NCBI GenBank assembly: GCA_002269645.1
Contig: NIVC01002059.1
Span: 219,322-283,321, forward strand
DNA length: 64,000 nt
Direction: 5' to 3'
Source of the DNA: Macrostomum lignano
Lineage: Eukaryota
Shown here: in pieces, positions 5,193-62,669 of the stretch
How positions within the stretch are numbered: position 1 is the stretch's first letter
Layout of the letters: each line of letters starts with the position of its first letter
Program-made: the position numbers and the translations under genes
The notes under the pieces: generated by a model
What the model saw: only the letters and a program-made list of their open reading frames with translations
The model's database searches: none
What the model was told of the DNA's origin: nothing

Positions 5193-5715
5193 ATTTTTTA
5201 AAAGAAAATATTGCATATAAGCCACACAAAATATGTTAACAATTTAGAAACCAGGCAATACATACAAACTGTAATTTATGAGTAAGGGATTCAGTAGCAT
5301 TTTAAACTTGAAATTAAAATTGATGTTTTAAATTAGATATTAGATCTCAATGACTGAAAGAATATGAATCAAGTGGCTTTATTTGTAGAAATTGGTCCAT
5401 CAAAAAAAGTTTTGGCCATTTGGAAAATTTTACTTTGAAATGTACAGTTTCTTGCAAAAAATCCTGAATTTTGTGTCCCAATAAGCAAGTAGCTATTGGC
5501 ATTATTTAAATGAAAGATACAGTTTAGACTCTATGCAGATTTAGCACAAAATAGACTGCAAAATTTGGATATCATTTTTGAAGCTTTTCCACTAGGTCCT
5601 ACTGGCAGTTGAGGCATCTAATAGTGACATTGCTGGGTTTGTTGCCCCTAGTAACATCTAAGTGATTCCCAATCACATGATTGTCCAAATTACACTGCAG
5701 CTGTAATTGCTTGAA

Positions 5716-8912: not shown

Positions 8913-10587
8913 CCCATGATGTCAAAACTCGGTCCATCACATCCTGTTACATTTCTTTAAACTAGTGTTAAATGCACACTATGTTTAAAATACTATCATT
9001 CTTCATGCACTATTTTTATTGATTCAGGGGCAGTCAAGTCCAAGCATGACTGTTTCGATAGCTTCATTATATAGTTCCTTCATGCCTACATATACAGATA
9101 AATGTTTTTTAATCTACCCATTTCATCAAATTGTTTTCAGTTGTTTTTGTCCTGCAGTAACGTTTGTAAATCCTTTTGGATTGTAATACTTTAGCATAAA
9201 CCAGTCAGTATACATGTACTTTTTAAATTTCTTCTTGTTTAATAATATTGTATCCATTCATAGCAGACTAGAGTATATAGCTGTTTGCAAGACTACATTT
9301 CTTGCAAGAATAAAAAATATAAGACAAGAAAATGTCTTATTTATAATAAATAATTACATTTAGAGTCAAACATAGATAATTCTACAGAATATCAGGCTGC
9401 ATTCATATGTACCATATATTAAGATGTCCAAACTCCAATATTCCATGCATATTTACAATGCAACAAAGCTTTTTGCAATCATATTTCATTTCTGTGCTTG
9501 ATTTGTTTTGTCTCTTCTTTCCAGTTTTTGCATCTTCTTGAACTTTTTGAGACTATACACAATGCACACGAATTTTCTCAGCTCTTTATATGCCATGTGT
9601 GCTATATTTAAACTGCCTTTGTAATTTCATACTTACTATAAAGCTTCTCTATTATACACTCATGCTTTAATTTTTGCTGTAGATGTATAAATATATTCTT
9701 TTTCCGTCTGAAGCAGACTTCTGAGTTAAAATATGAGTACATATAGATCTTCCTATGGATGTTTGAATCATCCAAAAGGATTATGTGATACATAAACTTT
9801 GCAATCATTCTTGTAACCACAGATATGAATTAGCGCCTAGCGGGATACTAAATTTCGCGCATAAATGCACATATCAGTCGTTCACGCTAAGAAATGTAGC
9901 TAACAATTTTCAGATAATGTTTTGAATTACTATATTTGCGTTATCCAACGCAATGCGCATTGTAATTAATTTGTAAATAGCTAGAAAATGTCACGAACAA
10001 AGCAATGTAATACTTGAGATAGTACCCTCAGGTTGCGCGACGCACAAATTGTTCAAAGTTAAACGAATGCGTATCATAGGTATACAGTCATATTATAACA
10101 AAATATGTTTATTTAAGGGTTCGGCGCTCCGTAAACAGAAAACTAATTAAATGAAATTATTATCTATTTTAAAAGAATAAATTACTCTATAGAATTTGAC
10201 GATGATATGCTGGTGTATTTCTAGTTTTCGTGCAATAAAATAATTCCGATAATAATATTTAAACAAAGCGGCATTCCATGCTGTCCTGACATTTTGTTGT
10301 GGTTTACGACACAAAATACGTTTGTTGCATCTATAATTCGTTCTTAGGTAAAGATTGAGTCACGAATTTTTAAAGAAAAAAAACGGAAGCATAAGCAGTG
10401 CCTGATTTTGAGAACGACCCGAACAATTAAAATATTTCAGTTACTTTTTTACTGCTAGTCTTATAAACATTTTAAATTACATTGTGCTTTTGTCTCGCGC
10501 GATCTTTTTTACCATTATCGTATTATTGCATTTTCAATCAGCAATACATTTACTTTCGAATCTTTGTCAACGATCGGAAATAAAGCA

Positions 10588-13500: not shown

Positions 13501-13955
13501 ACCGTCTAGTTAAGGTGTGGAACCTGACCAACTGCAAGTTGCGCACCAATCACATTGGGCACAGCGGCTACCTCAACACTGTTGCTGTCAGCCCCGACGG
13601 CAGCCTGTGCGCCTCCGGTGGCAAGGACGGCAAAGCCATGCTATGGGACCTGAACGAGGGCAAGCATCTGTACACCCTGGACGGTGGCGAGAGCATCAAC
13701 ACGCTGACCTTCTCGCCTAATCGCTACTGGTTGTGCGCGGCTACCGGTCCTCTAATTAAGATCTGGGATCTGGAGAACAAAGTGGTTGTTGACGATCTGC
13801 GCACCGAGGTTGTGGCCACTAGCACTAATCTGAAGCGCAAACCAGCTAGTCCAGAGTGCCTGTCGCTTGCCTGGAGTGCCGACGGTCAGACCCTTTTCGC
13901 TGGCTACTCGGACAATGTAATCCGCGTCTACGGTGTCACCGTGTCTGCCCAGTAG
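10588..13955 (+). CDS. RACK1: Receptor for activated C kinase 1 (WD40, 40S ribosomal protein), 320 aa
   Basis: Exon 1 10588-10696 ([23 protein letters not shown]...SASR G|gtaag) and exon 2 13102-13955 (ag|AC KSLIMW...). Typical RACK1 WD40 repeats ([35 protein letters not shown]). The phase-1 intron joins the exons in frame. Confidence 0.98.
12150..12560 (+). mobile_element. Highly decayed dispersed repeat, possibly a LINE remnant, in RACK1 intron 1
   Basis: ATGCCTAGACCAAATACCAACCTACCTTTCCAAGTTTATGGAAAT is similar to the reverse complement of ~42050-42100. The LINE identity is only weakly suggested. Confidence 0.4.
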
Positions 13956-16542: not shown

Positions 16543-19500
16543 TCAGATTGTGGTTCTTAGTTTCGGGAATTTGTCGTAGCGCACAGTGTCGCAATAGGCC
16601 AACATGTCGTCCGGTGGGGTGGACCAAATCTGTCCATTTGCGTCTGCTAGCACTGTGTAGTCGTCTTCAACCGTGCTCCAACTTGACGGCGGTATACCGC
16701 TGCTGGCAAAAGTACTTAATGCACTTTGCATATGCTGCATCAGAGCCTGATCGCGCCGGTCCCAGCTATCAGCTGCGCGCGGCGCCGTGCCCAGCATGAG
16801 GAGCAGGTCGAGGCCGTAGAATGCTCCCGTGTGCTTGCTGGCGCCGCCGATGGCTAGAAATTTCGACGGGTATTTCAGACTGTAGCGCTGCACAAAGTGA
16901 TAGATTGGCGAGCTGCGTTTGGCCTGCTTAACTAGGGATTTTGCCAGGTAGCGATAGGGGCAGATGAAGCGCAATAGGGTGGCCGCTCTGGCTGCGGTTA
17001 GCAGGCCCTGCGGGAGATTGCACAGATATTGAGACTTTCAACGCCCGTTGAAAGCGTTACTTTGGCAAGAATCGCGGGGTCGTTTCACAAACCTAAAATT
17101 TACAATGCCGAAAACTCAGAATGCCGCTATTCTTTACAATGCTGAAATTTCATGAACCCGAATTTTCACAATTCTTTTCAGTCAGTAAAATTTGTCATCA
17201 TGAAATTTTTTTCGACATTGTAAAATTTCGGTATTATGAAATGGGCTGCATAAATTTTCGACAACATGAAATTTCTGATTCTAATTCATAAAGTGACGCA
17301 GAACGCCTCAAATTAAACCATTAACGACTTTTTGCCTGGCGACTTGTACCGTGACATCTGGTCGTGTATAGATCGGTCCTATATTAATTTTACGTGTTAT
17401 CTGCAAGACTGCAACGACTCTGGGGACAACGCAAGTGGCTCTGTGACAATTCTTGGCCTAGATTCCGGTTTTATGAGGAAAGAAAAAATCCATTTTTCAC
17501 TGCTTGCTTTATATAGAACAGAAATAAATGAACACCTGACCGCTTCCGGTTGGCTAGGAGCACAGATACTATTGTAGAATACTATTTTAGTATGTGGCCA
17601 GTAGTAACGTGCAGTATCAGTTGTGTACTGTCAAGACAGTCACAACCACAGATACTAAAATAACTAGATGATCCACTCGGGCATATTTACTTAGAAAAAC
17701 AGCTTTCTACTTTCAGTTCAGTAGCAAAGAAGAATACATAAGCTATTTTATGAAAATAAAGCCAGCTCAAACGACTTTGATAAGTTTAGAAGCCCAAGCT
17801 TGCAGGCGTAAACAGCTTGCTAATTGGTTCAGCAATAATGTACATTAGCCAGTCCACTGAAATGTACATGGCAGCTTTAGGCTGGAATTCCGAGAAGGCA
17901 ATAAAAATTGGGGCGGGGCGGGGGTAGTGTGGAAAGGCACGGTTGGAGGTTTAAGCTAGGGGGGTAAGTGCCAAAAAGAGCCTTGGCTTTAAAAGTACAT
18001 TAAATGCTTCAGTTTAACTTGCTACTGAACTGAAAGTAGCTTGCACGCAAATGTGCTGAATGGCCCATCTGGTTATTCTCGTATCTGTGGTCACAACTCG
18101 TATTTCTCTCACGTTGGCGGGGTCACCATTTTGCCAGGTGCGGTCCTGTCCTATCGCAGCTATAGGATGAACTGGAGCTCACAATGGTAGATTGCGTAGT
18201 AGGTAAGGGACTGAAGTAATGGCGCACTCGTGTTTGGCCATTATTTCAGTACCTTACCTACTACGCAACGTCATTGTCTATAAGACACATAGAGGCCATT
18301 ATTTCAGCATAGCGTAGTCTGGTGGCCATTATTTCAGCGTGCCGGAAGTGGTCATTATTTCACACTTTTTATCATGCTTTAATTGGCTGTTTTGAGAGTT
18401 ATTTTACCCATAGATGACTGAGATGTGTGTCATAGTTTTACCATAGACAACACGTGATGAGTGCTGATTTCGTTTACGTCTTGCAAGAAATCAGGAAAGC
18501 GGGTATTACAAGTGAAAGCTATTTGTCTTGCCAAACAACTATGGCTGGTGCATCTCGTCAAACAGCCCCGCTTATTAATTGGAAAAATTTTCTTGTCGAC
18601 GACTGAACGAACCGTGCGACCCATGCTTCAGTGGAGATGACACAGGAGATGCGGGTGAAGCATGGTAAGCATAATGTGTCAACATTGTAAGTAAATTAGT
18701 GGCTATACTATATGAAACTGAATTTTTTACAATGTCCATTAATCTGCAGGTCAGATGGATTCGGAACGCGCAGTTCGCTTCTTCGAGAACTGCCACTTCA
18801 AGGATTAATGAAGGTTTCAGTTTTAATGAGCAACTTCTGTTGAACAGTCTATGACTACTGTGTTGTTTTTTGTGTTTAATGTGTGCGTTTTCCATTGTTT
18901 GTTAGCTAAAATGTCTTGACTATCCTTTTTTCACTGTATTCCAGAATGCCATGTAGACTGCGATCATTCCATTATGTCAGTTAATAAATGCATAGTTAAC
19001 TAATCGTCTATGGTTCAAGCGCCTGCTAAAGCTGAAATAATTTAGATCGAAATTTCACATTATTTCACAGCTTTTGAAACGCAACCCCGTCAGCAGCAGC
19101 AGCCCATGCATCGGCTGCGTGCAGTACGACTCAGCGCGGATGATGTCGCCTGCCAGAGCTTAGACGGAGCAGGCGGACGCGGCGATAGAAGTGCGACAGC
19201 ATGCATTCAAAGGTACTCATCAATATTAGCAAACCTGCGAGTCCGAGCGCGACATATCGGGCCGTTTTAGACGAGCAATCAGCCGATCAGGACTGCCGGC
19301 TAGTTCCAGATCCTTGACCGTTTTAAGAACTTTCTGCCAGACTTTATGCCACTTGTCCGAGGCCCGGAAGCCGGGAAAACCTTCGTAGTGATCGGCTACG
19401 TTGCCAAATACTATGGGAATGTCGTCCCACGAGCCCAAGCCCAAAGGACCTGCCTCAGTGGGCGAAGAGATCAGAGTGACACTGTCCGGTGCCAGCCATT

Positions 19501-22500
19501 CTAGCGGGGCCGGCGAAGCTTTGGTGTTGCCGGACACGGACAGGCTGCCCTGTTTGGTCAGTCCGGCCAGGCTTGGCCACCAGTCCTCCAGGTAGCCGGT
19601 GCGAGTCCACGCCTTGAATACGTCTTCGTTCGATGTCAGGTAGACGAGCAGGCGGCCCTTTGATGATAACAGTCGGGCTTCAGTTAGCGTGCATTCATAC
19701 TAGTAAAAACCACCAGCGCCATCCCCAATGCTCCCTATACGGTAAATGCAAGCAGGCGCGTCCCCACGGGGGGGGGGGACATGCCCCCCCCCCCAGTAAA
19801 AGCTCTGGGGGACATGCCAATGCTTTGTTTCCCCCCCCCCACCCCACCTTGTGAGTCGTTGTGGTAATCAATAACTTTTCTTCAGGGCGCCAATAGCGCC
19901 ATAAGTGCCTGCGGCGCTAAAATGAGTGCCTGTGGCGCTAAAATGAGTGCCTGTGGCGCTAAAATGAGTGCCTGTGGCGCTAAAATGAGTGCCTGTGGCG
20001 CTAAAATGAGTGCCTGTGGCGCTAAAATGAGTGCCTGCGGCGCTAAAATGAGTGCCTGTGGCGCTAAAATGAGTGCCTGTGGCGCTAAAATGAGTGCCTG
20101 CGGCGCTAAAATGAGTGCCTGTGGCGCTAAAATGAGTGCCTGCGGCGCTAAAATGAGTGTCTGCGGCGCTAAAATGAGTGCCTGGAGCGCTAAAATGAGT
20201 GCCTGCAGCGCTAAAATGAGTGCCTACGGCGCTAAAATGAGTGCCTGCGGCGCTAAAATGAGTGCCTGTGGCGCTAAAATGAGTGCCTGTGGCTCTAAAA
20301 TGAGTGCCTGTAGCGCCAAAATGAGTGCCTGTGGCTCTAAAATGAGTGCCTGTAGCGCCAAAATGAGTGTCTACGGCGCAAAATAATCGAGTGCCAAAAT
20401 TTAGTCATTTACATGTACATGTTGAACTCTTGGCTTTGTCCCCCCACCGTAAAATCCATGGCGACGCCCCTGCATGCGTCGAGATACATACAGTTCCTAA
20501 ACTTCAGTCCGCCTTGAGTGAAATCGCCCCACAACCAGCTCTGAGGCAGTTCTGCCCATTCCGCTGACTCCTGAGTACATGCAAGCGCGCCAATACTGTA
20601 CGCAGGCACGCAACTCACACACGCGCTCACACAGGGTGCACAGCGGCCCTGACTGTCTAATCGTCAGACATGTACACTCTCTGTGCCTTGAGGTTGGCCC
20701 TCACGAGTGTGAATCTCGCACGACAACCCGCCGGCTAATTTTCGTGCTCAAGCACCAAACGAACGCGGGCCACGCACGGAATCGAACCAGGGGCCGTGGC
20801 GTGAGATTCAGACGCGTTTAACGCTGAGCTGGTCTGCCCCCCCTGCCTGCATTCCTCCACACTCTCGACTAAGATCTCACCTCGTCCATCGTCTCCAACT
20901 CGCGTCGGCACTCGGTGACATTGTCCACCTTACAGTTGAGCTGCGCCTCTGTAATGTTGGTCCACCTGTTGGCGTGGATCTTTTTCAATGCTTTCAACAT
21001 CTCGGGCGCCGAGTCCGGGATGCGGGACGGACCGCTGGACAGCCAGGCCCCGTGGACGAGTCGCCTGCCTGTCCGCTGCTGCAGTTGCAGCAGCGCCATT
21101 ACCATCGCCGCGCCGCTGCCGTGACCGAACACTGTGACTCTGGGGGGGGGAATTGACAACTACCTTTTTTCTTTTTTGTCTTTAATGGGTTTCTTTCTAC
21201 TATCGCCAATCCGTTTCTGCACCCCATCACCAATCCGTTTCTGCACCCCATCACCAATCCGTTTCTGCACCCCATCACCAATCCGTTTCTACACCCCATC
21301 ACCAATCCGTTTCTACACCCCATCACCAATCCGTTTCTGCACCCCATCACCAATCCGTTTCTACACCCCATCGCCAATCCGTTTCTACACCCCATCGCCA
21401 GTCCGTTTCTACACCCCATCGCCAATCCGTTTCTACACCCCATCGCCAGTCCGTTTCTACACCCCATCGCCAATCCGTTTCTACACCCCATCGCCAGTCC
21501 GTTTCTAAACACCATCGCCAGTCGGTTTCTACACCCTATCGCCAATCCGTTCCTACACCCCATCGCCAATCCGTTTCTACACCCCATCACCAATCCGTTT
21601 CTACACCCCATCGCCAATCCGTTCCTACACCCCATCGCCAATCCGTTCCTACACCCCATCGTTATGTCTGGAAAGTCTTACAAGATCGACAAAGTCGATA
21701 TCTCAGCAGCTCACTTGTTTTTATCCCCGCCGAAGTGCTCGACAGTCTTTCGCAGATGCTCGAGACCGCGAACCAGGTCCGACAGGCCGTAGTTGACCAC
21801 CCTGAAGCCGGTGGCGTCGCCAGGTGGCCGGAAGGTGCCATGGAAGGCCAGCCGGTAGCCGATACGGACAACAACGGCCTGAAGCTGGTCTGGCAAGCCG
21901 TCGTCCGAGTGCAGCAGCGAGTCCTGGCCGAGGCTGCGCGTAGTCTCGGACACGAAACCGGAGCCGGTGACGAACACAATCACCGGGTAGCCGCTGTTGT
22001 AGTCGCGCGGCCGGCCAATACTCAGAAACAGGCAGTCCTCGGACATGGCCGGCTCGCCAGGGACGCCGACTAGCGGGTCCGCTTCGGGCAGGCGGATCAT
22101 GGTGGTCATGTTCGGCTCTACGAGCGGCGGCTCCGGCGTGCGAACCTGGTGCAGCTGCCTGAGAGATGTTCCAAAAGCGATCGGTCAGTTTTCTAGATTG
22201 GTCAGTTTTCTAGATCGGTCAGTTTTCTAGATTGGTCAGTTTTCTAGATTGGTCAGTTTATTAGATTGGTCAGTTTTCTAGATCGGTCAGTTTTCTAGAT
22301 TAGTCAGTTTTCTAGATTGGTCAGTTTTCTAGATTGGTCAGTTTTCTAGATTGGTCAGTTTTCTAGATTGGTCAATTTATTAGATCGGTCAGTTTTCTAG
22401 ATTGGTCAGTTTTCTAGATTGGTCAGTTTATTAGATCGGTCAGTTTTCTAGATTGGTCAGTTTTCTAGATCGGTCAGTTTTCTAGATTGGTCAGTTTTCT

Positions 22501-26527: not shown

Positions 26528-26700
26528 TCAAAAGTCCAATGGAGTACCCTGCGCAGAGGTGCCGCAGGTTGGCTGCGGCACTGATTTGCTCACTCGACTG
26601 GCCGTCTCCGAGATGTCGGGTGGCAGGTGCAGCCGCTGTAATTGGTTGTAGGAGAGCGGAAATACAGCTGTCTGTCTGTCTGTCTGTCCGTCTGTCTGTC

Positions 26701-26737
<37 letters not shown>

Positions 26738-26844
26738 GTGTGTTTGTCTGTCTGTCCGTCTGTCTCTGTGTGTTTGTCTGTCTGTCTGTCCGTCTGTCTG
26801 TCTGTCTGTCTGTCCGTCTGTCTGTCCGTCTGTCTGTCTCTGTG

Positions 26845-26883
<39 letters not shown>

Positions 26884-26941
26884 CTGTCTCTGTGTGTCTG
26901 TCTCTCTGTCCGTCTGTCTCTCTGTCCGTCTGTCTGTCTCC

Positions 26942-27019
<78 letters not shown>

Positions 27020-27024
27020 GTGCC

Positions 27025-27079
<55 letters not shown>

Positions 27080-27190
27080 GTGTGTTTGTCTGTCTGTCCG
27101 TCTGTCTGTCTGTCTGTCTGTCTCTGTGTGTTTGTCTGTCTGTCCGTCTGTCTATCTGTCTGTCTGTCCGTCTGTCTGTCTCTGTGTGTT

Positions 27191-27221
<31 letters not shown>

Positions 27222-29797
27222 CTGTCTCTGTGTGTCTGTCTCTCTGTCCGTCTGTCTGTCTCTGTCTGTCTGTCTGTCTGTCCGTCTGTCTGTCTCCGTC
27301 TGTCTGTCTGTCTGTGTGCCTGCCTGTCTGTCTGTCTGTCTGTCTGAGCCCAACTACCTGCACCTAAGCCTACAGGGCACATATAGCGGCCATCAGTCAC
27401 CACAAAACGCAAAACACGCCAACCTGAATAAGGAAATTCTTCCGGCGCACTCTGAAGCCAAACTCGAGCGTGTCCGGCCGGGCCACCGGGGCCGCGGAGC
27501 CGGGCAGGCAGGGCAGCTTGGCCAGGCTCAGCAGGCCGTGCAGGTCGCGGTACAAAGGATTGGCGGCACGGCGTCGACCGCCGGCCACCTGCAGAGAGTC
27601 CAGCCGCAGACAGTAGTCGACCAGGTGCCGCATTCGATCGGACAGGATCGGCCGCTGAAAATCGTTGGCAATTGTTCCAAGTCCACCACCACAGATACTA
27701 CTATAAGTAGATAGGCCACTCATTGGCTCGCTTAAACAGTTCTCTACTTGCAGTTCAGTAGTACGAATGCGTAAGCGCAGGGCCTATCCACCAGTTCTCA
27801 CTTCTCAGCCAATTCCACATGAACTCACCTGCAGTCGCAGACAGTCAGGCACGGTGAGCCAGACGGTGCACAGGTGCTTGGCGCAGAGATCCCGCAGGCT
27901 GTACAAACAGCGCAGGGCGTCGCTCTCGTTGTCTAAGCGGCCCCAGAGTGGGGATGCGAAACCTGGGATAACTGCAGGCGAGGCGGGGAGCGAAGAGGTT
28001 TTTATAGTTACAGGAAATCTAACCCAGTAGATTAGATAGACCGGAAATCTCACCCAGTAGATCAGATAGACTGGAAATCTCACCCAGTAGATCAGATAGA
28101 CTGGAAATCTCACCCAGTAGATCAGATAGACCAGAAATCTCACCCAGTAGATCAGATAGACTGGAAATCTCACCCAGTAGATCAGATAGACCAGAAATCT
28201 CACCCAGTAGATCAGATAGACGGGAAATCTCACCCAGTAGATCAGATGGACCGGAAATCTCACCCATTAGAGCAGATAAACCGGAAATCTCACCCAGTAG
28301 ATCAGATAGACCAGAAATCTCACCCAGTAGATCAGATAGACGGGAAATCTCACCCAGTAGATCAGATGGACCGGAAATCTCACCCATTAGATCAGATAGA
28401 CGGGAAATCTCACCCAGTAGATCAGATGGACCGGAAATCTCACCCATTAGAGCAGATAAACCGGAAATCTCACCCAGTAGATCAGATAGACTGGAAATCT
28501 CATCCATCGCACCCAGTAGAGCAGATAAACCGGAAATCTCACTCATCTCACCCAGTAGAGCAGATAAACCGGAAATCTCACTCATCTCACCCAGTAGAGC
28601 AGATAAACCGGAAATCTCACTCATCTCACCCAGTAGAGCAGATAAACCGGAAATCTCACTCATCTCACCCAGTAGAGCAGATAAACCGGAAATCTCACTC
28701 ATCTCACCCAGTAGAGCAGATAAACCGGAAATCTCACTCATCTCACCCAGTAGAGCAGGATTCGAAATCTCGGTCCATGGCAAGTGTCAAAAAAAGAAGT
28801 CAGTACCAAGAAAAAGATAACAAATATGAAGGAATTAAACTAGCCAGCAAGTCTTACCAACTTTGAGCAGACTCTGCGTATCCTCAGTGGGCCGGTCGGG
28901 ATACCGGAATTCCGGCCCGCCATCGACAAGGCGCTGCCGAATTTGATCCAAAGCCAGGCTGGCATTGGCAGGGAATGAGCTGCGGGTTGGAGCATCAGTA
29001 TAGAAGTATTATCTCGGTGTGTATGACCAGAAATTCAAGGCCAAGAGTAAGATTACCTACCCACCTACCTACCTACCTAACTACCTACTTATCTATCTAT
29101 CTATCTATCTATCTAATTTCAGTTTAAACTCATTATACTACTTACGATGCTCTTATCATTAAGCGGTATGGAACGGGTATTTTTGAATTGCGTGATACTG
29201 CTGCGAAAGGCCATATTGGGTAATCGCGGATCCAGGGACTCACTACATCACTCACTAAGGGCTAGGCAATTTCCTACAGAAAAACCTATTTAGTTTAGCA
29301 TTTTTCAACGAACGCCAGGATCTGTCAATTGGAACGCACCCGAATTCGTCAAGATGAAGAACGTTCAATCGAAGCGAGCCAGCCTCTTCGAGCTTTGTCA
29401 AGTCTAACTTCTTTGACAGATCGAAACTTTTAGCTCCGGTTGTGGATTTGTCAAGGCTGTGCCGCTCCTATAATGGAGAGGGGTGAGTCAGTTTGTTCGC
29501 AAAAAGCAGCAGACATGCCCGTTGCACTGAGTCAATTTACTACGAGAAAATCATTGAGGCGAAAATGATACGATTAATCAGTATAAAGTAGTAAAAAATA
29601 TTATTATTTATAGTCACTCGCCTCGAACTGCGGCGCGTTCATGTAACGCCAGGCGATGGCCAGGCCGTCGTCGTTGCCAGCGCCGCTGTCTCCAATGCCA
29701 CCTGCTGGTTGCTGTTGCTGTTGTTGTTGTGATTTTGTACCCTCCTCAAGATCTGGCAGATTCTGGAATTAAGTGCGTTGTTTAGTAGAGGTAGTAA

Positions 29798-29883
<86 letters not shown>

Positions 29884-29893
29884 ATAGTAGTAG

Positions 29894-29979
<86 letters not shown>

Positions 29980-30542
29980 CGGTAGTAGTAGTAGTCGTCG
30001 TAGTAGTAGTATCAAAGAGAACCCCGCAATTACTCCCATAGGACATCTCACACCCCGCCACCCACCGCTAGCAGGTACTCCGAGTGCGCTTGGTTGGCGG
30101 CCACTAGCATCACGTGATGCCCATCCAGCAGGCTCTGGGCCAGGAAATAGCGAGTCAACACGCCTGCATAGGCGCCTGTTGCGTCTTCGTCTGTTGTTGG
30201 GTTTTTTATGGGTGTCGTAGAAACAATTGGCATATGATATTATCAGAGTGATGTTACAATAGGGATTTCATAGTCGCTGCCAGCTAATTAAAAAGGGATG
30301 CCAGTGTTTCCATCCTCACCGACAACGCACAACCCGCCGACAGCCAGCCCGCCGCCAATCAATACGTCGAGAGCGGCCACTCCGCAGCTGGTGACCGTCG
30401 CCTGCTGATTCTGCGCCACCAACTGCTGTTGCTTCTGCTGCTGTTGCTGCTGTCCACAGACGGGCCGGCCGCCGGGCACGCGAGGCCGAGGCCGCGAGAT
30501 GCCGACGCCGGGGCCGCCTGGAGCAACGCGACGAAAGCCAGA
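26528..30542 (-). CDS. ELP4: Elongator complex protein 4, 8 exons, 406 codons, no in-frame ATG
   Basis: Exons 30542-30320, 30190-30066, 29762-29622, 29467-29340, 28979-28858, 27971-27829, 27654-27424 and 26635-26528, all in frame. ELP4 motifs: TSCGVAALDVLIGGGLAVGGLCVVDED, LAIAWRY, SFDLSKK, GFASPLWG, NPLYRDLHGLL..KLP, RLHLPPD...LDF*. Confidence 0.93.
26668..27345. repeat. (TCTG)n-derived microsatellite in the last ELP4 intron
   Basis: Imperfect TCTG/TCCG/TGTG runs. Source of the spurious TDRQ/VCLS ORFs. Confidence 0.98.
28014..28770. repeat. 30-bp minisatellite changing to a 39-bp unit
   Basis: Unit AAATCTCACCCAGTAGATCAGATAGACCGG. From ~28500 the units carry 9 extra nt (CTCATCTCA). Confidence 0.95.
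29786..30011. repeat. (TAG)n microsatellite in ELP4 intron 2
   Basis: About 70 TAG triplets. Confidence 0.98.
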
Positions 30543-30598
30543 CTGAAGAAATGGCAAGAAACACAAGACTATAGCTAGGCAATTGGACTGTCTTAATT

Positions 30599-30860
30599 TA
30601 TCTTCTTCATTTATCCTTCCCTCCGGTGAAATGTCTATGGCCGGACTGTCTCACCCTCTATCTCTCCTCATCTATCCTTCCCTCCGGTGAAATGTCTATG
30701 GCCGGACTGTCTCACCCTCTATCTCTCCTCATCTATCCTTCCCTCCGGTGAAATGTCTATGGCCGGACTGTCTCACCCTCTATCTCTCCTCATCTATCCT
30801 TCCCTCCGGTGAAATGTCTATGGCCTGACTTTCTCACCCCCTATCTCTCCTCATATATCC
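30599..30860. repeat. 61-bp tandem repeat (~4 copies) just upstream of the first ELP4 acceptor
   Basis: Unit TATCTCTCCTCATCTATCCTTCCCTCCGGTGAAATGTCTATGGCCGGACTGTCTCACCCTC. Confidence 0.92.
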
Positions 30861-30943
30861 TTTCCTCCAATAAAATAATCAACATCAATTAACAACAGAA
30901 ATTCAAAGCCAATCGGCAAGTAACCACACAAATAGTAAAAAGT

Positions 30944-30949
30944 TTTATT
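30944..30949 (-). terminator. Candidate poly(A) signal of the ankyrin gene (most distal of several)
   Basis: AATAAA followed by TTTGTGTGGTT on the minus strand. Other AATAAA motifs occur near 31160, 31430 and 31490. Confidence 0.45.
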
Positions 30950-31769
30950 GACTGGCGCATCCACGGCGCAGCGAGATAATCGCATTTGTACGAGCTATTT
31001 GCCAAGCACACAGGGGTAAAAGGAGTGCAGATAAATTAACACTAGCACACTTTCAATCGACCATTTATGGACCGGAGGAGTTGAAATAGCAAACAATACT
31101 TTGTTATAATAAAAAAGCTAACTATATAAACATTTATCCCAATAAATTCGCCTGCAAAGTTTATTAAGCTGTCATGAAATAAAGAAAAGTTGACATCAAG
31201 CTATTTAAAACAAAAACTATAAATAAAATAACAACTTGAACAAATAATAAAGCTATCCAAATCATAATAATACAGGGATAAGAATGAAAGCGGAATCAAC
31301 TAATTTAACTTAAAGAGAGGCAAGACGCTGATAAATGAAAAATATTTCTAACGGACGCAAACAAAGAGTGGCGCATTTTGTAACTTGGCCTTGGCAAAAC
31401 AATCTTTCAGAGTTAAAAATGTAGAAAATTTATTATTTAATTCGCACTAAAAAATACGACCGGAAGCAAATCTGTGCCTTCTATCCTACATTTTATTTAG
31501 CAGCAAAAGTAATAAATTCAATCTACACGAATGCGCGATACACCCTACTAAAAGTCAGTCGTGTGAAAATTAAGCTAAAAATGTAAACATTGCATTTATT
31601 TTATGTATTGTTTTAACATAATATTGAAAATAAAAAAACTATTTCTAAAAGCCTAATTATTTATACGTTAATAAATAGTAAATTTCTGTTGTCAATATTA
31701 CAGATTTTTTATTACAGGTTGTGTGCACCCATTGTCACACAACCGGTGAGAGGCATTGCTGCCCATTCC

Positions 31770-32010
31770 GCCAACTCCCCTGAGCAGGCACACAAGCGCG
31801 CGGATACGTACGCAGTCATACGCACAGGCACACACTCACACAGGAGTGTACAGCGGCCCTAACTTTATTTATCGTTAGGCATGTACACTTCACTGTGCCT
31901 TGGGGGTTGGCCCTCAGGGGCGTTAATTGCACGAGCAACGACTGCACTTGGAATCGAGCCTGGGCCGCTGGCAGATCAGAGCGCCGCGCTAGACTACTGG
32001 GCTACGGCCC
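31770..32010 (-). mobile_element. tRNA-derived SINE copy 2
   Basis: GGGCCGTAGCCCAGTAGTC (A box), GGCTCGATTCC (B box, 31950-31960), and a body homologous to copy 1. Confidence 0.75.
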
Positions 32011-32685
32011 TATATATTACAGATGCATTATACTAGCTAATATGAACTAATATAAATATGAACTCCTATGATTTGTAGTTTAACTCTTTAAAATTTTGCT
32101 AGTCAAAGGCGAGAGACAAAGCATCAATTAAAATCCGACGAATAGCATTAAAGCATTCTCATTGTAGCGGCATAAAATCGACTTTTTTATTTACTGACTG
32201 TAACTGATAGACTGCTAGGGAAAGGCCAGCAAAAATATAGATTATATACTGAAGCTCAGCAAGATTTAAAACTTTGCGACGCACAAAGCTGTTCAATACT
32301 CGTAGAATTCCAAATCGATTCGTTTTCTCTCCTGTTGACAGACAGAAGCCGGGTTTACAGGGGATTTTTTACAAGGAGAATGTTACACCGATAGCAATAG
32401 ACTATAGAGGCTTAGGAGCTGGTAGTATCTGTTGTAATAACAGTTAATTTACTAACTAAAAGCATCCAGATGGACAAGTTTCTTAAAAAAATCCAACATT
32501 CCATCTTTGCGCTTCACAGACGTTCATCTAAGCAGCTAGTTGCTATCGACGCAAAACAAGCGAAACGACACACTAAATTAACAAAGAAAGTATACCGTTA
32601 TTTTTTTAAATTTATTCTGCATATAAAGAAAGCAACCAAGACTGCAATGATTCGCGCGGACAAGCTACTTAGAGTAGATGAAATG

Positions 32686-33713
32686 TCAAATGTCCCGACC
32701 ATTATTAGCATGGGTAAAGCCGTTAGCCAGCTGCTGATGCTGATGGCCTTGGCGAGTTTCGAATCCGTCAACTGACTCGCCGTCGCCCTCGTCGTCCGTG
32801 GTAACGTAGCCGTTGGTGACGATCTCCGGATAGGCCGGGGCCAGCATCTGCCTCATCTCCGGGTCTTCACCGGCCAGGTCCAGTGGCGTCTCGCCGCGCT
32901 GACAGAAAGGGGAAGAGGATTGTCAGTTAGACAAAATAAACAGGAAATTACTTGTTTAACAAAATAAATCTCTTGGGGTAAACTTTGCAAATCACCCCAA
33001 TTAAAGGCATAACCCCATAATTACAAGCAAAACACCCCCATTAAGAGCAGAACACCTTAGGTAACAGCAGAACACCTCAAGTAAAAGCAGAACACATCAG
33101 GTAAAAGCAGAACAGACAGACAACAATACACCTCAGGTAAAAGCAGAAAATTCCTATGAAAAGCAGAATACCTCAGTTAAATCAGAACATCCCAATTAAA
33201 AAAGAGCATCCATAATATAAAATCACAAAACTCCAATACTCCAATCAGAAGCCGAACATCTCAAATGGAAAGCACGTTACAAAGATTGGGACCAGAAAAA
33301 CGAATAGAAGCGGAATATTGCAGCTAAAAGCAGATTCTCACGCACCATGGACTTCCTCTCCGGATTGGCCCCGTAGCTAATCAGCAGTTCCACAGCCGCC
33401 TTCGCTTCCCGATTCACGGCCCAGTGAAGCGCCGTCCAGCCCGACATGTCAGCGGCGCCAACATCGGCTCCGTGGTCCAGCAGGCACTTGGCTAGCGGCA
33501 GGTGGCCGTGGTAGATGGCGAACATCAGCGGAGTGAAGTCGGCCTCGCCGCGAGCGCCCGATCTCGGCGGCTGGGATCGATCATCGACGCTTAGGCCGGG
33601 ACAGCGGCTGAGCAGGCACTCGGCTATGTCCACTAGGGTGCGATCGAAGCGTGACCTGGCGGGGAGGTGGCGGTGCCGTTAGCTGGCCGACTGGGACTGG
33701 CAGACAGACACTC

Positions 33714-33767
<54 letters not shown>

Positions 33768-34652
33768 CAAGACAGGCGGACAGACAGACAGACACTAAGA
33801 CAGACAGACAGACAGACAGACAGATGAAGACAACAAGACAGACAGCTAGAGTAGTTAAACACTCAACCCCTCTCCAATTTACCTGTCCAACGGCAGGGCC
33901 GCCGGTCCATTAGAAGTCGGCGGCGCGATCGGTGCCGAAGAAACACTTCGGGTGGCAGTGTCGCCCTCTGCGTCAACAGCAGATTGCTGCTGCTGGTTGC
34001 GCGCGGCGGCGGCGGCAGCGGCAGCAGCGACGGCGGCCAACGCGTCCTCGCCGTGGCCATTGCCGGCGGAATCGCCGTTACCAGAGGCGGCGGCGGCAGC
34101 CTGCAGCTCGGCCATGACAGCGGCGTACACAGGCGAGTTGGCCTGGTCCAGACAGGCCGTGCTAACCCGCTTGCCGTTCTGACAGATTTGACTCTTTGGC
34201 GCCGCCCGGCACAGCTCGTGCAGGCAGTTGCGGCCGTCGTTATTCCGGTGCAGGAAGTCGCACCTGGCGTCCAGCAGGCAGCGCACAACGGCCGGCTGGC
34301 AGAAATAGCAGGCCATGATGAGGGCCGACCAGCCTCTCTCGTCTACAGCGCTGGGATCGGCGCCGGCTTTCAATAGCATTTGAACAATTTCATCTTGGCC
34401 AGTCATAGCGGAATGGTGCAGCGCAGTGTGCTGCTTGCTGTCGCGAGCGTCGACCTGGCAGCCGGCTGACAGCAGCAGGCGGACAATCTCTGGCTTGCCC
34501 TGGCTGGCCACGTGGATGGGGCAGGACTGGTGCACGTGGCTCACCCAGTTGACATCGATGCCGCCAGATTCTAATAATTGGCGAACTTTCCATTCGCGAC
34601 CGTAGCTGCAGCACTCCCAGAATGCCTCCTGTTTGGTGGCAGCCTGGCCCAT
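32686..34652 (-). CDS. Ankyrin-repeat protein, ~430 aa, 3 coding exons, putative N-myristoylation
   Basis: Exons 34652-33883, 33655-33346 and 32898-32686 are in frame. Ankyrin repeats: CPIHVASQG, TALHHSAMTG, SALIMACY, TPLMFAIYHG, TALHWAV, TPLDLA. N-terminus MGQAATK. Confidence 0.92.
33700..33845. repeat. (ACAG)n microsatellite in the ankyrin gene intron
   Basis: Direct observation. It reads (TCTG)n on the transcribed strand, just upstream of the acceptor. Confidence 0.95.
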
Positions 34653-34807
34653 GTTGAGCGAATTGGCTGAAATGATTATATAGTATTATTGCTTACTAAG
34701 AGTTTTTAACAAACAGTTTGATGCGAAAGCATAATTAAGAACAAACAAATAGCCAAAAAATATATTTAAGGACACTCGCGAATTTATTCAATTTTGCTTT
34801 AGGGGAT

Positions 34808-38283: not shown

Positions 38284-40716
38284 ATCGAGTGGCAAACCAA
38301 GACGACAAAAACGATAGCGTCTAGTTTAGCTGAACTTGGGCTTACTAAATGTTGGAAAGTTGCTGCATTGGTTTGTAGTTTTTTTTTATTTAAAGGGGCT
38401 GCAAAGGAAAGTGTATCTCTATAGCTTACAATCATTTTAAAGCGTTTTATTTCGATAAAAATACCCCCAGGTGGAGAATGCGCAAATTCAGGAAAATAAG
38501 CACCAGGCATGTGTTGCGGTGCCTAGAAAATGTCCCAGGCTCTTTCGCAGGCATCGTTTTACAACGGGATCAATTGAAAAGAAAGTCACGTACTTCCCTG
38601 CTACAGTCAAACAGTGAATCAATGTGAATAAAATGAAAATGTTGCTTCCCCCGATCTTACCTTCAGTAGTGCCAACTTATATAGTAGCCTCCAATGGAGC
38701 TGAGAGAGCTGTATTGAGCAGGATTAGCTAAGCTATTTGGCTGGATTGTATATTCTAAATTGGAAGAAAATGAAAGGAAAGGGAAAGAATACACAGAAAA
38801 AGTGACTACACACTTTTTAAAGTGACTATGAAGAGAGCGGGAGATTCATATATAGTTATAGGGGAAGCGCGCTGAGAACAGCTGACTTGCTGCCGTCACC
38901 GTCTCCTCTCCCCTATCTCTGATTGGATCGGAGTTGAGCCCCTGCGTGAGTCAGAGTCACGCGCGCTCAATGCACACTGAACTATAGAGAGAGCCACGCT
39001 AGTACCGGTAAGTGAGCTGTTGTGAGACAGCAACAGCAGCATTATATACAATACACTCCGCGAACATGGTCCGAGATACGTTGCCAAGAACCCAGACCCA
39101 GACGGAAGTGCCCAGTGATGGACAACACCAGGAGGAAGACCGGCATCACGGATATGGGCGGCTTATGCGCCATGCCCGAGGAATGCCGGGCCCTTTGGAA
39201 CGAGTTCCGAATACGGGCTAAAATGAAGAGTGAATAGGGCTGTGGTACGGCAACGCCAACAACAACAACAACAACAGCAGCAGCATTTTTTGAGCAGCTG
39301 GGTGCATGTGGCTCAGCTGTATTACCCCCACTCCCCCTGGGGCGTGGCAGGACGCAGGATAGAGAAAGCCGCAAAAGAAAAGAATTAAAAGACACGGGAC
39401 AGCCTAATGAGGGATTAATTTTCTGTCTTTAAAGACGCTAATTATATTCTATTAGTAAGAGAAGAATCCTTCCCGCAGACATTGCCCATAAATAATAAAA
39501 AATATGCGCCCTTACACAATATTTTTAGAAAGTGAGTAATTTCAAAACCATATAGCTAGAAGCTGTTAGATTAAAGGAAACAAACACACATTCTAAATAG
39601 CCAAAAAAAGTTCAAAGAGTCCTGCTATTACGCTTCTGCGCAAAGCTAAAATATCAAATTAAAGGGAAATAAGCTGTAAAGCTACAGTCTGTGATGAGGA
39701 GCAGACACAGACAGGGAGCTGAAAAAATCTTATATATATAAGACAAAAAACACGCAATAATTTGCATTACTTCTGTCGCACTAGCCATGCGGTGGACGCC
39801 TAAAATTTATATCTAAAAAAATGAGTGCACAGCAACACTGCGGGAGAGAGAATTGAGTAGTATAGTGCACGCGCACTAAGATTAATGCCCGGCCGCCAGC
39901 AGTAAGCCAGTAGAATACACGTCTGCGAAGAAGATTAATCAGAAGACTATCGTCTAATCTCAGGCCCCGTGTCTCCCAGGGTTCGGAATTTCCTTCGCAA
40001 TCTTCCCCATTACCTACTGGAAAGTTTCCAGAGAGACTCAACCATCCAAATGGCGGCTTTCAGTCTCTTAAGCAAAAGCCGGTCCAGCAACAAAGGCGGC
40101 GGCCAGGGCCAGGTAATCTATCGCGCTCCGCTGGGCATCCTATTTGATGAATAGCGGCTTAGTTATTAGTTCGACTACAGCATCCAGCGATTCATTAAGG
40201 CATTCTGTCGGGCAAAAGCAATCAAATTCTTCTCTAGAAGACCACAATATCATATTAGAAAAGCTTCGGTATATTGCATAAAAAAGTCTATCATGCTCGA
40301 ACTGCTCTACTTACAAGAACAAGTAGACTAGAAAGAATTAACATCAGGTTACAAAAAAGGGTTATTGGATCGGCTATAACATTATGCTGAATGCTGAAGC
40401 ACAAAGAGCTTTCATTGACAGCTCTTTTGACATCGGATCTGTAAGTATCTGACTGACATGGCATGCATGCATTCAGTCAATATGATTAATCGGCTGAAAT
40501 CTAATATCTATTCTTCTAGACTAATCCGATGGACAGTTCTTACTCGCAGTGTTCAAAGGGACAGTTATCCCATTACAATGACGAGTCTCAAGAGATATGA
40601 GCAAATAGATTAGTACAGCCAATCATAGAAAAGCCGAGAGTAAATAAAATCTAGAGAAATTATCATCTGGATTCATCGAACTATCAGTTTCAGCAATACC
40701 ACCTTAAAGAGCAGCA

Positions 40717-47785: not shown

Positions 47786-47887
47786 AGTGGGATGGGTAGA
47801 ATTTCCTCAGCCACCTCAGTATCCTGCGATTATTGTTGTTAAAAGTGCAAATTTACCATACAAAATCCCACAGCGATCTGTAAAACA

Positions 47888-49463
47888 ATGCTTGAATGCC
47901 TGTGGCGAGGTTGCCCAGTCGGTTGTGTGCAATCCGACTTGGCCAATCACGTGATGTCGCACGCGGCCAAATTGGAATCAGGCGACAGTTTGGCCTGCCA
48001 GTGGCGCGGCTGCAAGCGCTCGGAAAAGCCGTTCCTGTATCGCTACCAGCTGCAGCAGCACGCAGCTCTGCACGCAAATGAGTTGCAACATGCCTGCGTG
48101 CACTGCGGCAAGCGTTTTAACACCGAGGCTTACCTACGCCGGCATCTGGAATCTCATCAGCTACCAGAGGAGCGGCGCCACGCCTGCTCAGTCTGCGGCA
48201 AACGATTTGCCCATTCGGCTGACAAGAGTCGCTGCGAGCGCGGCCACCGGGGCCAGCTGCACAACTGCCGGCACTGCGGCAAAGCTTTCAAAGATCCCGG
48301 AAATTTGCGCAAGCATCGGAAGCGCTGGCATGCGGACGAGCCGCTTGATGGTAAAATTTTGATTGTACACAAGTTTTAAAGCGTGGATGGACATTATAGT
48401 TGAAACTCTGAACGTGTTGAAGATTCTAAAGAATCAGTCATGTGTCTGCATTCGGACAGAGCAGAACAAATTTTAGCACTAAGATGCCTGGGCTCGATTT
48501 CGTGTGCGGCGAAGTTTCGTACTTGGCTTGGGGTTTTGGTCGTACGATTCATGCCTGTGAAGGTCAGCCCGAAGCAAGGGGAAAACGGCGATTGTCTCAA
48601 GCAATTTGACTGACTGACAATTTGCAGGGGCGTCGCCATGGATTTTACGGTGGGGGGGACAAAGCCAAGAATTTTACATGTACATGACTAAATTCCTACA
48701 TGCACATTATTTTGAGAATCGGTGTTGTCAGCGCTCATTTTGGCGTCGCAGGCACTCATTTTGGCGCTGCAGGCACTCATTTTGGCGCCGCAGGCACTCA
48801 TTTTAGCGCCACAGGCACTCATTTTGGCGCCACAGGCACTCATTTTGGCGCCACAGGCACTCATTTTAGCGCCACAGCCACTCATTTTAGCGCCACAGGC
48901 ACTCATTTTGCATGACAGGGCAGTGTGGCAACTGTGGAGATAGACAATGTATTACAAGATAAAAATTAATATTCATTCTTTTCCTCTGTCCTTTCTCAGC
49001 CACCAGCGGCGGTTCAGCCGCAACCAATGCGACATCTCCGTCTGTAACTGCGGTGGCAACAGCAGCAGCAGAAACAGCAGCTGCTGCCACACCCCTGCGC
49101 CTGGCTCCGAGCCAGTCTGCTCCAACTGCGCAGCCGCCGCCTCCACCGCCAGCGCAGCACCCGCCTCCACCCCACACAGCCGTGTATTCCTCTTGCGTCC
49201 TACCACCGATCTCCTCGTTCACTTTGAGCAAGGACGGCGCCCTAGATCTTACATTGGGCATACAGGACGGCTTTAATTTGGTCGATGGCACCTACCTTGC
49301 CGGCGAGCGAGCTCAGCCAGTGTGCGGCGCTCTCGATCTCACTCAATCTGCTCATTGCGACGCCTCGTTATGCTACGATTTTGATCAGCTCTGCCCGGAC
49401 CTGGAGACCGGGCCCGGCCGGCCTGTTGACCTTAGCTTGCCTAGGCTTGAGTACTATTCCTAA
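47888..49463 (+). CDS. C2H2 zinc-finger protein (5 fingers, tandem CWCH2-type first pair), 308 aa, 2 exons
   Basis: Exon 47888-48350 (..ADEPLD G|gtaaa) and exon 49000-49463 (tctcag|CC) are in frame. CLWRGC..H..H and CQWRGC..H..H are followed by three CGKxF fingers and an Ala/Pro-rich C-terminus. Confidence 0.9.
48625..48910. mobile_element. Partial second copy of the CAGGGGCGTCGCC element with its 21-bp array, in the zinc-finger intron
   Basis: Reverse-complement match to 20385-20472 plus ~8 units of GCACTCATTTTGGCGCCACAG. Confidence 0.8.

Positions 49464-62636: not shown

Positions 62637-62669
<33 letters not shown>

What the first reader, a model, noticed from the sequence alone, without database searches (positions are those of the whole stretch)
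30520..30960. ELP4 lacks a start codon: the initiator AUG may come from the spliced leader
Seen: TTTCTTGCCATTTCTTCAG|TCT GGC TTT CGT CGC starts in phase 0, there is no in-frame ATG upstream, and the 406 codons already cover an ELP4-sized protein. Upstream lie a 61-bp tandem repeat and AATAAA + GT-rich sequence, with no good ATG-exon donor. Known: flatworm spliced leaders end in AUG, which can act as the initiator Met. Inference: SL-AUG + SGFRR gives M-S-G-F-R-R, so translation of this conserved gene would depend strictly on trans-splicing.
Basis: partly seen in the sequence, partly recalled or inferred. Interest (0 to 1): 0.8.

Follow-up and report, generated by a model that had tools for sequence, protein, structure and literature searches.

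The report
Flatworm ELP4 gene without start codon
In the flatworm Macrostomum lignano the ELP4 gene has no start codon of its own, and most likely takes it from the AUG that ends the trans-spliced leader, a mechanism known in flatworms since 2006 but not confirmed here by RNA data.

Summary
The window is the last 64 kb of Macrostomum lignano contig NIVC01002059.1. On the minus strand it carries an 8-exon, 406-codon ELP4 (PAXNEB) gene. The first coding exon starts at 30542, directly after a pyrimidine-rich cttcag acceptor, with TCT GGC TTT CGT CGC (S-G-F-R-R). No in-frame ATG lies between the acceptor and the upstream in-frame stop (TGA, 30653-30651). The first internal Met is residue 102. All three genomic copies are identical here.

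The published M. lignano spliced leader ends in ATG. Joined at this acceptor it gives MSGFRR..., the commonest N-terminal layout among ELP4 orthologues (MSSFKK, MSGFKRR). No credible cis exon that supplies an ATG exists in the 2.3 kb upstream.

Existing annotations fail in the way this predicts. GenBank calls the CDS "partial" and starts it 14 codons into exon 1. UniProt starts it at an ATG inside an intron.

I found no transcript evidence that the leader is joined at this site, so trans-splicing here is inferred (about 0.75).

The mechanism is already known (Cheng et al. 2006, Schistosoma; also Echinococcus). This is a new member of a known kind. It is useful for annotation but of modest interest.

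The parts
30543..30568 (-). Pyrimidine-rich tract and 3' splice acceptor (ttgtgtttcttgccatttcttcag; AG at 30544-30543). This is the proposed SL trans-splice acceptor.
   Evidence: Sequence read. Positions -25 to -4 are 82% pyrimidine. CTTCAG fits the M. lignano trans-splice acceptor motif [T/C]TNCAG (PMC8629364). Four of the gene's 7 cis acceptors fit that motif too (read), so the fit is consistent but does not discriminate.
30320..30542 (-). ELP4 coding exon 1 (223 nt). It begins in phase 0 with TCT GGC TTT CGT CGC (SGFRR), has no ATG, and ends at donor TCG|gtgagg.
   Evidence: GC content is 0.69, against 0.44 in the 400 nt upstream. The sequence is identical in the three genomic copies L001, L002 and L003.
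26528..30190 (-). ELP4 exons 2-8 (30190-30066, 29762-29622, 29467-29340, 28979-28858, 27971-27829, 27654-27424, 26635-26528, the last including stop TGA) and the introns between them.
   Evidence: Exact threading of protein P0001 onto the window. Pfam PF05625 is precomputed for P0001. The protein matches yeast Elp4 structures 4ejs, 8asv and 4a8j.
30651..30653 (-). First in-frame stop (TGA) upstream of exon 1. It closes the reading frame 36 codons before the acceptor, with no ATG between.
30599..30868 (-). 61-bp minisatellite (4.4 copies) in the presumed outron or intergenic DNA. Copy number differs between the three genomic copies.
30944..30949 (-). It is probably not meaningful.
   Evidence: It is one of 10 AATAAA/ATTAAA hexamers in the 2144 nt between the stop of the ankyrin gene and the ELP4 acceptor.
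31056..31064 (-). ATG|GTCGAT, the only upstream ATG directly followed by GT outside the ankyrin gene's coding sequence. It is the candidate cis donor of the rival explanation.
   Evidence: It has C at +3 and A at +5, whereas all 7 ELP4 donors have G at -1 and G at +5.
32686..34666 (-). Upstream same-strand neighbour, an ankyrin-repeat gene. Its first exon starts after tttcag| at 34666, its own ATG is at 34652, and its stop ends at 32686.

Best explanation
**Proposed mechanism.** The M. lignano ELP4 pre-mRNA is SL trans-spliced at the cttcag acceptor (AG at 30544-30543). The 35-nt spliced leader ends in AUG. Joined to exon 1 it creates ...UUGCAUG|UCUGGCUUUCGU. The SL AUG is therefore the only available initiator and gives M-S-G-F-R-R-V-A-P..., a 407-residue Elongator subunit 4. 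The DNA upstream (the 61-bp minisatellite and AT-rich sequence with several out-of-frame ATGs) would be an outron that is discarded.

**Shown here:**
- the gene, its exon structure and the absence of a genomic ATG;
- the match of reading phase between the SL ATG and exon 1;
- the fit of the resulting N-terminus to orthologues;
- the lack of a credible cis exon upstream.

**Taken from the literature:** the SL sequence and the use of the SL AUG in other flatworms.

**Inferred:** that the SL is actually joined at this acceptor and that ribosomes start at its AUG.
For: 1. **Organism and SL.** The window is 100% identical to M. lignano NIVC01002059.1. The published SL is CGGTCTCTTACTGCGAAGACTCAATTTATTGCATG. 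About 30% of genes are trans-spliced, with enrichment in conserved genes (PMC8629364).
2. **Frame.** SL plus exon 1 translates in frame as MSGFRRVAPGGPGVGISRPR.
3. **No genomic start.** There is no ATG in the 36 in-frame codons upstream. The first internal Met is residue 102, past the conserved GGGLAVG region.
4. **Orthologue N-termini.** I examined 96 M-starting ELP4 representatives with the N-terminal [ST]F[KRQ][KR] motif. The F is most often at position 4 (22 proteins, e.g. MSSFKK; P0154 is MSGFKRR and P0083 is MSGFVKRR). That is exactly where M+SGFRR puts it.
5. **No credible cis exon.** Of 31 'ATG...phase-0 GT' candidates in the 2.3 kb upstream, none has a GTRAG donor. The only one with both -1 G and +5 G lies inside the ankyrin coding sequence. 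All 7 real donors of this gene have both.
6. **Acceptor.** It fits the species' trans-splice motif and has a strong pyrimidine tract.
7. **Annotation behaviour.** The RNA-seq-based GenBank models of all three copies are 5'-partial, start 42 nt inside exon 1 and have no upstream exon. That pipeline mapped reads end-to-end, so SL-bearing reads were lost (PMC5730564). The neighbouring ankyrin gene shows the same 26-47 nt truncation although it has its own ATG.
8. **Precedent.** More than 40 S. mansoni cDNAs need the SL AUG (Cheng 2006, as cited in PMC9851317). The same reasoning was applied to E. granulosus cDNAs (PMC3510090).
Against: - I found no read, cDNA or transcript-derived protein showing the SL joined to TCTGGC. 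Homology searches and exact look-ups of the M+406-aa and 406-aa products of both gene-copy variants (P0001- and P0002-type) found nothing.
- The acceptor motif does not discriminate: 4 of the gene's 7 cis acceptors fit it too.
- About 40% of ELP4 orthologues have 2-8 extra residues before the motif, and vertebrates have about 20. Homology therefore allows a small upstream coding exon.
- Flatworm acceptors are often shared between cis- and trans-splicing (PMC12582326).
- The three genomic copies are too similar to give any evolutionary test.
- The SL AUG sits in a poor context, with T at -3 and T at +4 (read from the sequence).
Confidence: 0.75

Rival explanations
1. A short cis-spliced first exon supplies the ATG. 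A transcript would start in the AT-rich DNA near 31100-31300 and a first exon would end exactly in ATG at 31064-31062 (ATG|GTCGAT). A 519-nt intron containing the minisatellite would be removed to the same acceptor. The protein would be the same MSGFRR....
For: The ATG|GT exists in the right phase. The intron size is ordinary for this species: the mean is 1.1 kb (PMC5730564). One real donor of this gene (gttggc) also has a pyrimidine at +3. Flatworm acceptors can serve both cis- and trans-splicing (PMC12582326).
Against: GTCGAT has C at +3 and A at +5. All 7 ELP4 donors have G at +5, and 65% of M. lignano donors are GT[GA]AG. No such exon appears in the RNA-seq-based gene models of any of the three copies, although cis junction reads would have mapped.
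Confidence: 0.12
2. An unrecognised upstream coding exon adds a short N-terminal extension with its own ATG, as in vertebrate ELP4. It could lie further away or use a weak or non-canonical donor.
For: Fifty-five of the 96 orthologues with a recognisable motif have extra residues before it (F at position 6 or later). Fish ELP4 has about 18. The GenBank model is 5'-incomplete, so it cannot exclude more exons.
Against: None of the 31 candidates in 2.3 kb has a donor resembling those of this gene. The upstream DNA is 37-44% GC, against 69% in exon 1. Beyond 2.1 kb lies the ankyrin gene.
Confidence: 0.07
3. There is no AUG at the N-terminus at all. Translation would start at a non-AUG codon upstream, or at internal Met102, or the locus is a decaying copy.
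For: The frame is open for 36 codons upstream and contains TTG, ATA and CTA codons.
Against: Exon 1 encodes the conserved SGFRR and GGGLAVG regions, which a start at Met102 would lose. The 36 upstream codons run into the minisatellite and the pyrimidine tract and look non-coding. All three copies keep an intact 406-codon frame.
Confidence: 0.04

Closest known systems
[quoted passage not shown]
   Same: It is a flatworm SL ending in AUG. The AUG is in frame with the main ORF. The recipient exon has no ATG of its own, so the conserved N-terminus is only completed by the SL.
   Different: The species (a free-living macrostomorph) and the gene (ELP4) differ. In Schistosoma the junctions were seen in cDNAs and translation from the SL AUG was tested. 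Here neither has been shown.
Echinococcus granulosus SL-bearing cDNAs that need the SL AUG to match orthologue N-termini (PMC3510090)
   Same: The same argument from orthologue N-termini applies, and the SL has the same property.
   Different: Those were real SL-containing cDNA clusters. Here only genomic DNA is available.
slORFs: ORFs created by SL addition in nematodes, Oikopleura and trypanosomes (slORFfinder, PMC9851317)
   Same: The start codon is contributed by the leader rather than by the gene.
   Different: Those cases mostly use near-cognate NUG codons in the SL and often give alternative or extended ORFs. Here a canonical AUG would start the one conserved ORF.
Cis-spliced genes whose first exon ends exactly after the ATG
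   Same: The first protein-coding information in the second exon starts at codon 2, in phase 0.
   Different: Such genes need a genomic ATG|GT donor. The only candidate here, ATG|GTCGAT, is poor.

Membership tests
ELP4 / PAXNEB (Elongator subunit 4) | PAXNEB domain (Pfam PF05625) over most of the protein | tested here: met
   PF05625 is precomputed for the 100%-identical P0001. A profile built with this protein retrieved 2848 homologues.
ELP4 / PAXNEB (Elongator subunit 4) | Sequence similarity to experimentally characterised Elp4 | tested here: met
   phmmer matches to yeast Elp4 chains 4ejs_A, 8asv_G and 4a8j_A, with E-values from 6e-6 to 2e-5. Identity to fish ELP4 is 35% over 94% of the query.
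Flatworm mRNAs initiated at the SL 3'-terminal AUG | The organism's spliced leader ends in AUG | tested here: met
   This rests on the literature, not on this window. The M. lignano SL ends ...TTGCATG (PMC8629364; PMC10468722). No SL RNA gene lies in the window.
Flatworm mRNAs initiated at the SL 3'-terminal AUG | The mRNA is SL trans-spliced at the acceptor in question | not testable with these tools
   No M. lignano reads or transcripts for this gene are in the searchable collections. The gene identifier was not found in any paper's full text, and no supplement of PMC8629364 is held.
Flatworm mRNAs initiated at the SL 3'-terminal AUG | The SL AUG is in frame with the main ORF, with no stop between | tested here: met
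   SL plus exon 1 gives MSGFRRVAPGG..., continuous with the 406-codon ORF.
Flatworm mRNAs initiated at the SL 3'-terminal AUG | No alternative genomic AUG can give the conserved N-terminus | tested here: met
   No ATG lies in the 36 upstream in-frame codons. The first internal Met is residue 102. No credible ATG exon exists in the 2.3 kb upstream.
Flatworm mRNAs initiated at the SL 3'-terminal AUG | The N-terminus matches orthologues only when the SL Met is added | tested here: met
   F of the motif at position 4 is the modal state among 96 orthologues, and MSGFKRR and MSGFVKRR exist. The caveat is that N-terminal extensions are also common.
Flatworm mRNAs initiated at the SL 3'-terminal AUG | Translation actually starts at the SL AUG | not testable with these tools
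   This needs ribosome profiling, N-terminal proteomics or a reporter assay.

The most novel reading that the evidence does not exclude
ELP4 is a conserved subunit of the tRNA-modifying Elongator complex. In M. lignano it would have lost its own start codon in all three genomic copies, making its translation obligatorily coupled to SL trans-splicing. If so, it is probably one visible example of a large, uncatalogued class of M. lignano genes. Their GenBank CDS are flagged 'partial', or their UniProt N-termini are mispredicted, because annotation pipelines trim or ignore the SL AUG.
Probability: 0.7. Interest if true: 0.4.

Novelty: new member of a known kind. Interest (0 to 1): 0.3.

Why it matters
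If confirmed, the result corrects the ELP4 gene model of a flatworm model organism. GenBank entries PAA61214, PAA72125 and PAA52120 are 5'-partial. UniProt entries A0A1I8GZJ4 and A0A1I8H5S2 start at an ATG inside an intron and lack exon 1.

It also points to a systematic gap in annotation. Pipelines that trim the SL, or that map reads end-to-end, cannot give a start codon to genes that depend on the SL AUG.

It would be a clean test case in an organism with working transgenesis for asking how strictly the expression of a housekeeping gene depends on trans-splicing. It does not reveal a new mechanism.

Tried and rejected
**Searches for transcript evidence.**
- Two homology searches of the 5.8-billion-protein collection found only the genomic M. 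lignano models and distant ELP4s. The second search had the polyQ runs removed.
- Exact look-ups of the M+406-aa and 406-aa products of both gene-copy variants (P0001- and P0002-type) found nothing.
- The Logan transcript contig of P0014 (SRR3402057) is from an unidentified, distant species. Its 5' end shows its own ATG and no SL-like sequence.

**Searches of the literature.**
- The gene identifier Mlig018002 does not occur in the full text of any held paper.
- No supplement of PMC8629364 is held.
- Cheng 2006 and the PMC id I tried for Wasik 2015 are not held. Cheng 2006 is therefore cited through other papers.

**Searches in the window.**
- There is no SL or SL-like sequence and no Rfam family at gathering score.
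- The permissive Rfam scan of 30400-32800 gave only a chance miRNA hit.

**Comparative approaches.**
- Comparing the three genomic copies is uninformative. They are identical from the last 61-bp repeat into exon 1 and differ only in repeat number.
- No other flatworm ELP4 was among the best 150 representatives. The highest identity to M. lignano was about 33%. Conservation of the ATG-less state in flatworms could therefore not be tested.

**Readings rejected.**
- The AATAAA at 30949 as a meaningful upstream poly(A) site: 10 such hexamers lie in 2.1 kb.
- Alternative acceptors inside exon 1: CCAG|GC at 30517 is out of frame with the SL ATG. The in-frame CAGs lie in the polyQ codons, lack pyrimidine tracts and would delete the conserved motif.
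- The GC-rich, tRNA-like island at about 31700-32010: it is not a tRNA by ARAGORN, its fold is no better than shuffled sequence, and it occurs once in the window.

Full report
**What is there**

The finding lies on the minus strand. Read 5'->3' on that strand, the sequence is ...gtcttgtgtttcttgccatttcttcag|TCTGGCTTTCGTCGCGTTGCTCCAGGC..., with the first exon base at window 30542.

A protein search with the conceptually spliced product returned one near-identical hit, P0001. It is named 'hypothetical protein BOX15_Mlig018002g1, partial [Macrostomum lignano]' and carries Pfam PF05625 (PAXNEB/ELP4). Solved yeast Elp4 chains are matched by sequence. Fish ELP4 is 35% identical over 94% of the query. 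The gene is therefore ELP4 of the free-living flatworm M. lignano.

The protein is encoded at three places in assembly GCA_002269645.1, which I fetched as loci L001, L002 and L003. The window is the last 64 kb of NIVC01002059.1, record positions 219322-283321. I derived this.

Exact threading of the protein gives 8 exons and 406 codons plus a stop. Intron 3 has a GC donor.

**The missing start codon**

- Upstream of the acceptor the frame stays open for 36 codons, back to TGA at 30653-30651, and holds no ATG.
- The first Met of the 406 residues is residue 102. It lies beyond the conserved GGGLAVG segment.
- The three genomic copies are identical from the last 61-bp repeat unit into exon 1, so this is not an assembly error.

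Existing annotations show the problem. The three GenBank CDS are flagged partial and begin at ISRPRP, 14 codons into exon 1. The two UniProt models begin at MPIVSTTP, which is an ATG inside intron 1, and they omit exon 1.

**The spliced leader**

The published M. lignano SL is CGGTCTCTTACTGCGAAGACTCAATTTATTGCATG. About 30% of genes receive it, and conserved genes are strongly enriched among them. The top motif at trans-splice acceptors is [T/C]TNCAG (PMC8629364).

The acceptor here is CTTCAG, behind a tract that is 82% pyrimidine. SL plus exon 1 reads in frame as MSGFRRVAPGGPGVGISRPR.

The SL of other Macrostomum species is highly conserved. Its terminal ATG is described as a likely translation start codon (PMC10468722).

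**Does the N-terminus fit?**

A profile search of 1.84 billion representative proteins gave 2848 ELP4 homologues. Among the best 150, 96 start with M and carry a recognisable [ST]F[KRQ][KR] motif. The position of the F in these is distributed as follows:

| Position of F | Number of proteins |
|---|---|
| 4 (the mode; e.g. MSSFKK, MSSFRR, MSGFKRR in P0154, MSGFVKRR in P0083) | 22 |
| 5 or less (includes the 22 above) | 41 |
| 6 to 12 | 38 |
| More than 12 | 17 |

M+SGFRR therefore reproduces the commonest architecture. Short N-terminal extensions are about as frequent, and vertebrates have about 20 extra residues. Homology makes the SL-AUG model natural but cannot exclude a small upstream coding exon.

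**Is there a cis exon?**

I listed every ATG in the 2.3 kb upstream, with every phase-0 GT reachable without a stop. There are 31 candidates, and none has a GT[GA]AG donor.

All 7 real donors of this gene have G at -1 and G at +5. The only candidate with both lies inside the coding sequence of the upstream ankyrin gene.

It would give the same protein but has C at +3 and A at +5.

Exon 1 is 69% GC. The 400 nt upstream are 44% GC, and the rest of the intergenic DNA is 37%.

**Indirect evidence from the annotation**

The GenBank models derive from StringTie on STAR alignments run with --alignEndsType EndToEnd (PMC5730564). SL-bearing reads cannot map in that mode, but cis junction reads can.

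In all three copies the ELP4 model has no upstream exon and stops 42 nt short of the acceptor. The neighbouring ankyrin gene starts after tttcag| at 34666 and has its own ATG at 34652. It is truncated in the same way, by 26, 44 and 47 nt in the three copies.

This is what a 5'-terminal exon looks like in that pipeline. It is weak evidence, because low coverage alone could do the same.

**What could not be shown**

I found no read or transcript with the SL joined to TCTGGC. The protein collections hold no transcript-derived product of this gene. The gene identifier appears in no paper's full text. The relevant supplements are not held. Trans-splicing at this acceptor, and initiation at the SL AUG, remain inferred.

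**Surroundings**

The upstream same-strand gene encodes an ankyrin-repeat protein, and its stop is at 32686. The 2144-nt spacer contains the 61-bp minisatellite, AT-rich DNA and 10 AATAAA/ATTAAA hexamers.

The minisatellite has 4.4 copies here and more in L001 and L003. That variation suits neutral outron or intergenic DNA.

I cannot tell whether ELP4 is the downstream gene of an operon with the ankyrin gene or has its own promoter. In M. lignano operons are defined by repeat-adjusted spacers under 1 kb.

**Comparison with what is known**

The SL 3'-terminal AUG as initiator Met was demonstrated for S. mansoni by Cheng et al. 2006. By later citation, the AUG is in frame in 28% of trans-spliced transcripts, and more than 40 cDNAs need it (PMC9851317).

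All reported flatworm SLs end in ATG (PMC12582326). [quoted passage not shown] That is the same argument as the one made here.

I found no gene-by-gene treatment for Macrostomum. This is therefore a new member of a known kind, not a new mechanism.

**Verdict**

| Question | Answer |
|---|---|
| Observation | Confirmed |
| Interpretation | Most likely right (about 0.75), but unproven at the decisive step |
| Cis exon ending in ATG | About 0.12 |
| Unseen upstream coding exon | About 0.07 |
| Non-AUG start, internal start or decaying copy | About 0.04 |
| Interest | 0.3 |

The case is a tidy one, useful for annotation and as a test bed in a transgenic flatworm. It would not surprise specialists.

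Noticed in passing
window 34652-34666 (minus strand); L002:5835-5882: The upstream ankyrin-repeat gene also begins right after a trans-splice-type acceptor (tttcag|CC) but has its own ATG 14 nt later. An SL AUG joined there would be out of frame and would open a 32-codon upstream ORF overlapping the real start. The GenBank CDS of all three copies start 26-47 nt after the acceptor and miss this ATG.
   Followed up: partly
window 26668-27346, 28013-28758, 29783-30011, 29054-29115: The ELP4 introns are dominated by tandem repeats: (GACA)n of about 680 bp in intron 7, 30-bp and 39-bp minisatellites of about 750 bp in intron 5, (CTA)n of about 230 bp in intron 2, and (TACC)n in intron 4. Several of them create long spurious ORFs.
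   Followed up: partly
window 29616-29621 (minus strand): Intron 3 of ELP4 has a GC-AG boundary (GAG|gcgagt). It is required to reproduce the GenBank protein exactly.
   Followed up: yes
window 31700-32010 (minus strand): A GC-rich island in otherwise AT-rich intergenic DNA has a tRNA-like head (GGGCCGTAGCCCAGTAGTCTAGCGCGG...GGCTCGATTCC). ARAGORN does not call it, its fold is no better than shuffled sequence, and it occurs once in the window. It may be a tRNA-derived SINE or a decayed tRNA.
   Followed up: partly
window 38909-38990 (minus strand): ARAGORN predicts a tRNA-Gln (CTG) of 82 nt. Rfam reported no tRNA at gathering score in the window, so the prediction is doubtful or the gene is atypical.
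   Followed up: no
window 10459-13952 (+): A WD40 gene resembling RACK1, with its own genomic ATG ([17 protein letters not shown]...).
   Followed up: no
window 16546-22184 (minus strand): Carboxylesterase-family exons (PF00135) are spread over about 5.6 kb, with a minisatellite at about 21100-21800. No gene is called here in the GenBank annotation listed for L002.
   Followed up: no
window 54265-56097 (+): A 611-codon open frame encodes DEP, DHEX and RGS domains (an R7-type RGS protein) in one exon.
   Followed up: no
window 62395-63012 (+): An exon encodes the MCM N-terminal and OB domains. The window, and with it the contig, ends about 1 kb further on.
   Followed up: no
window 47843-48376 (+) and 5707-7866 (+): A C2H2 zinc-finger exon, and a 720-codon open frame with no Pfam match.
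   Followed up: no
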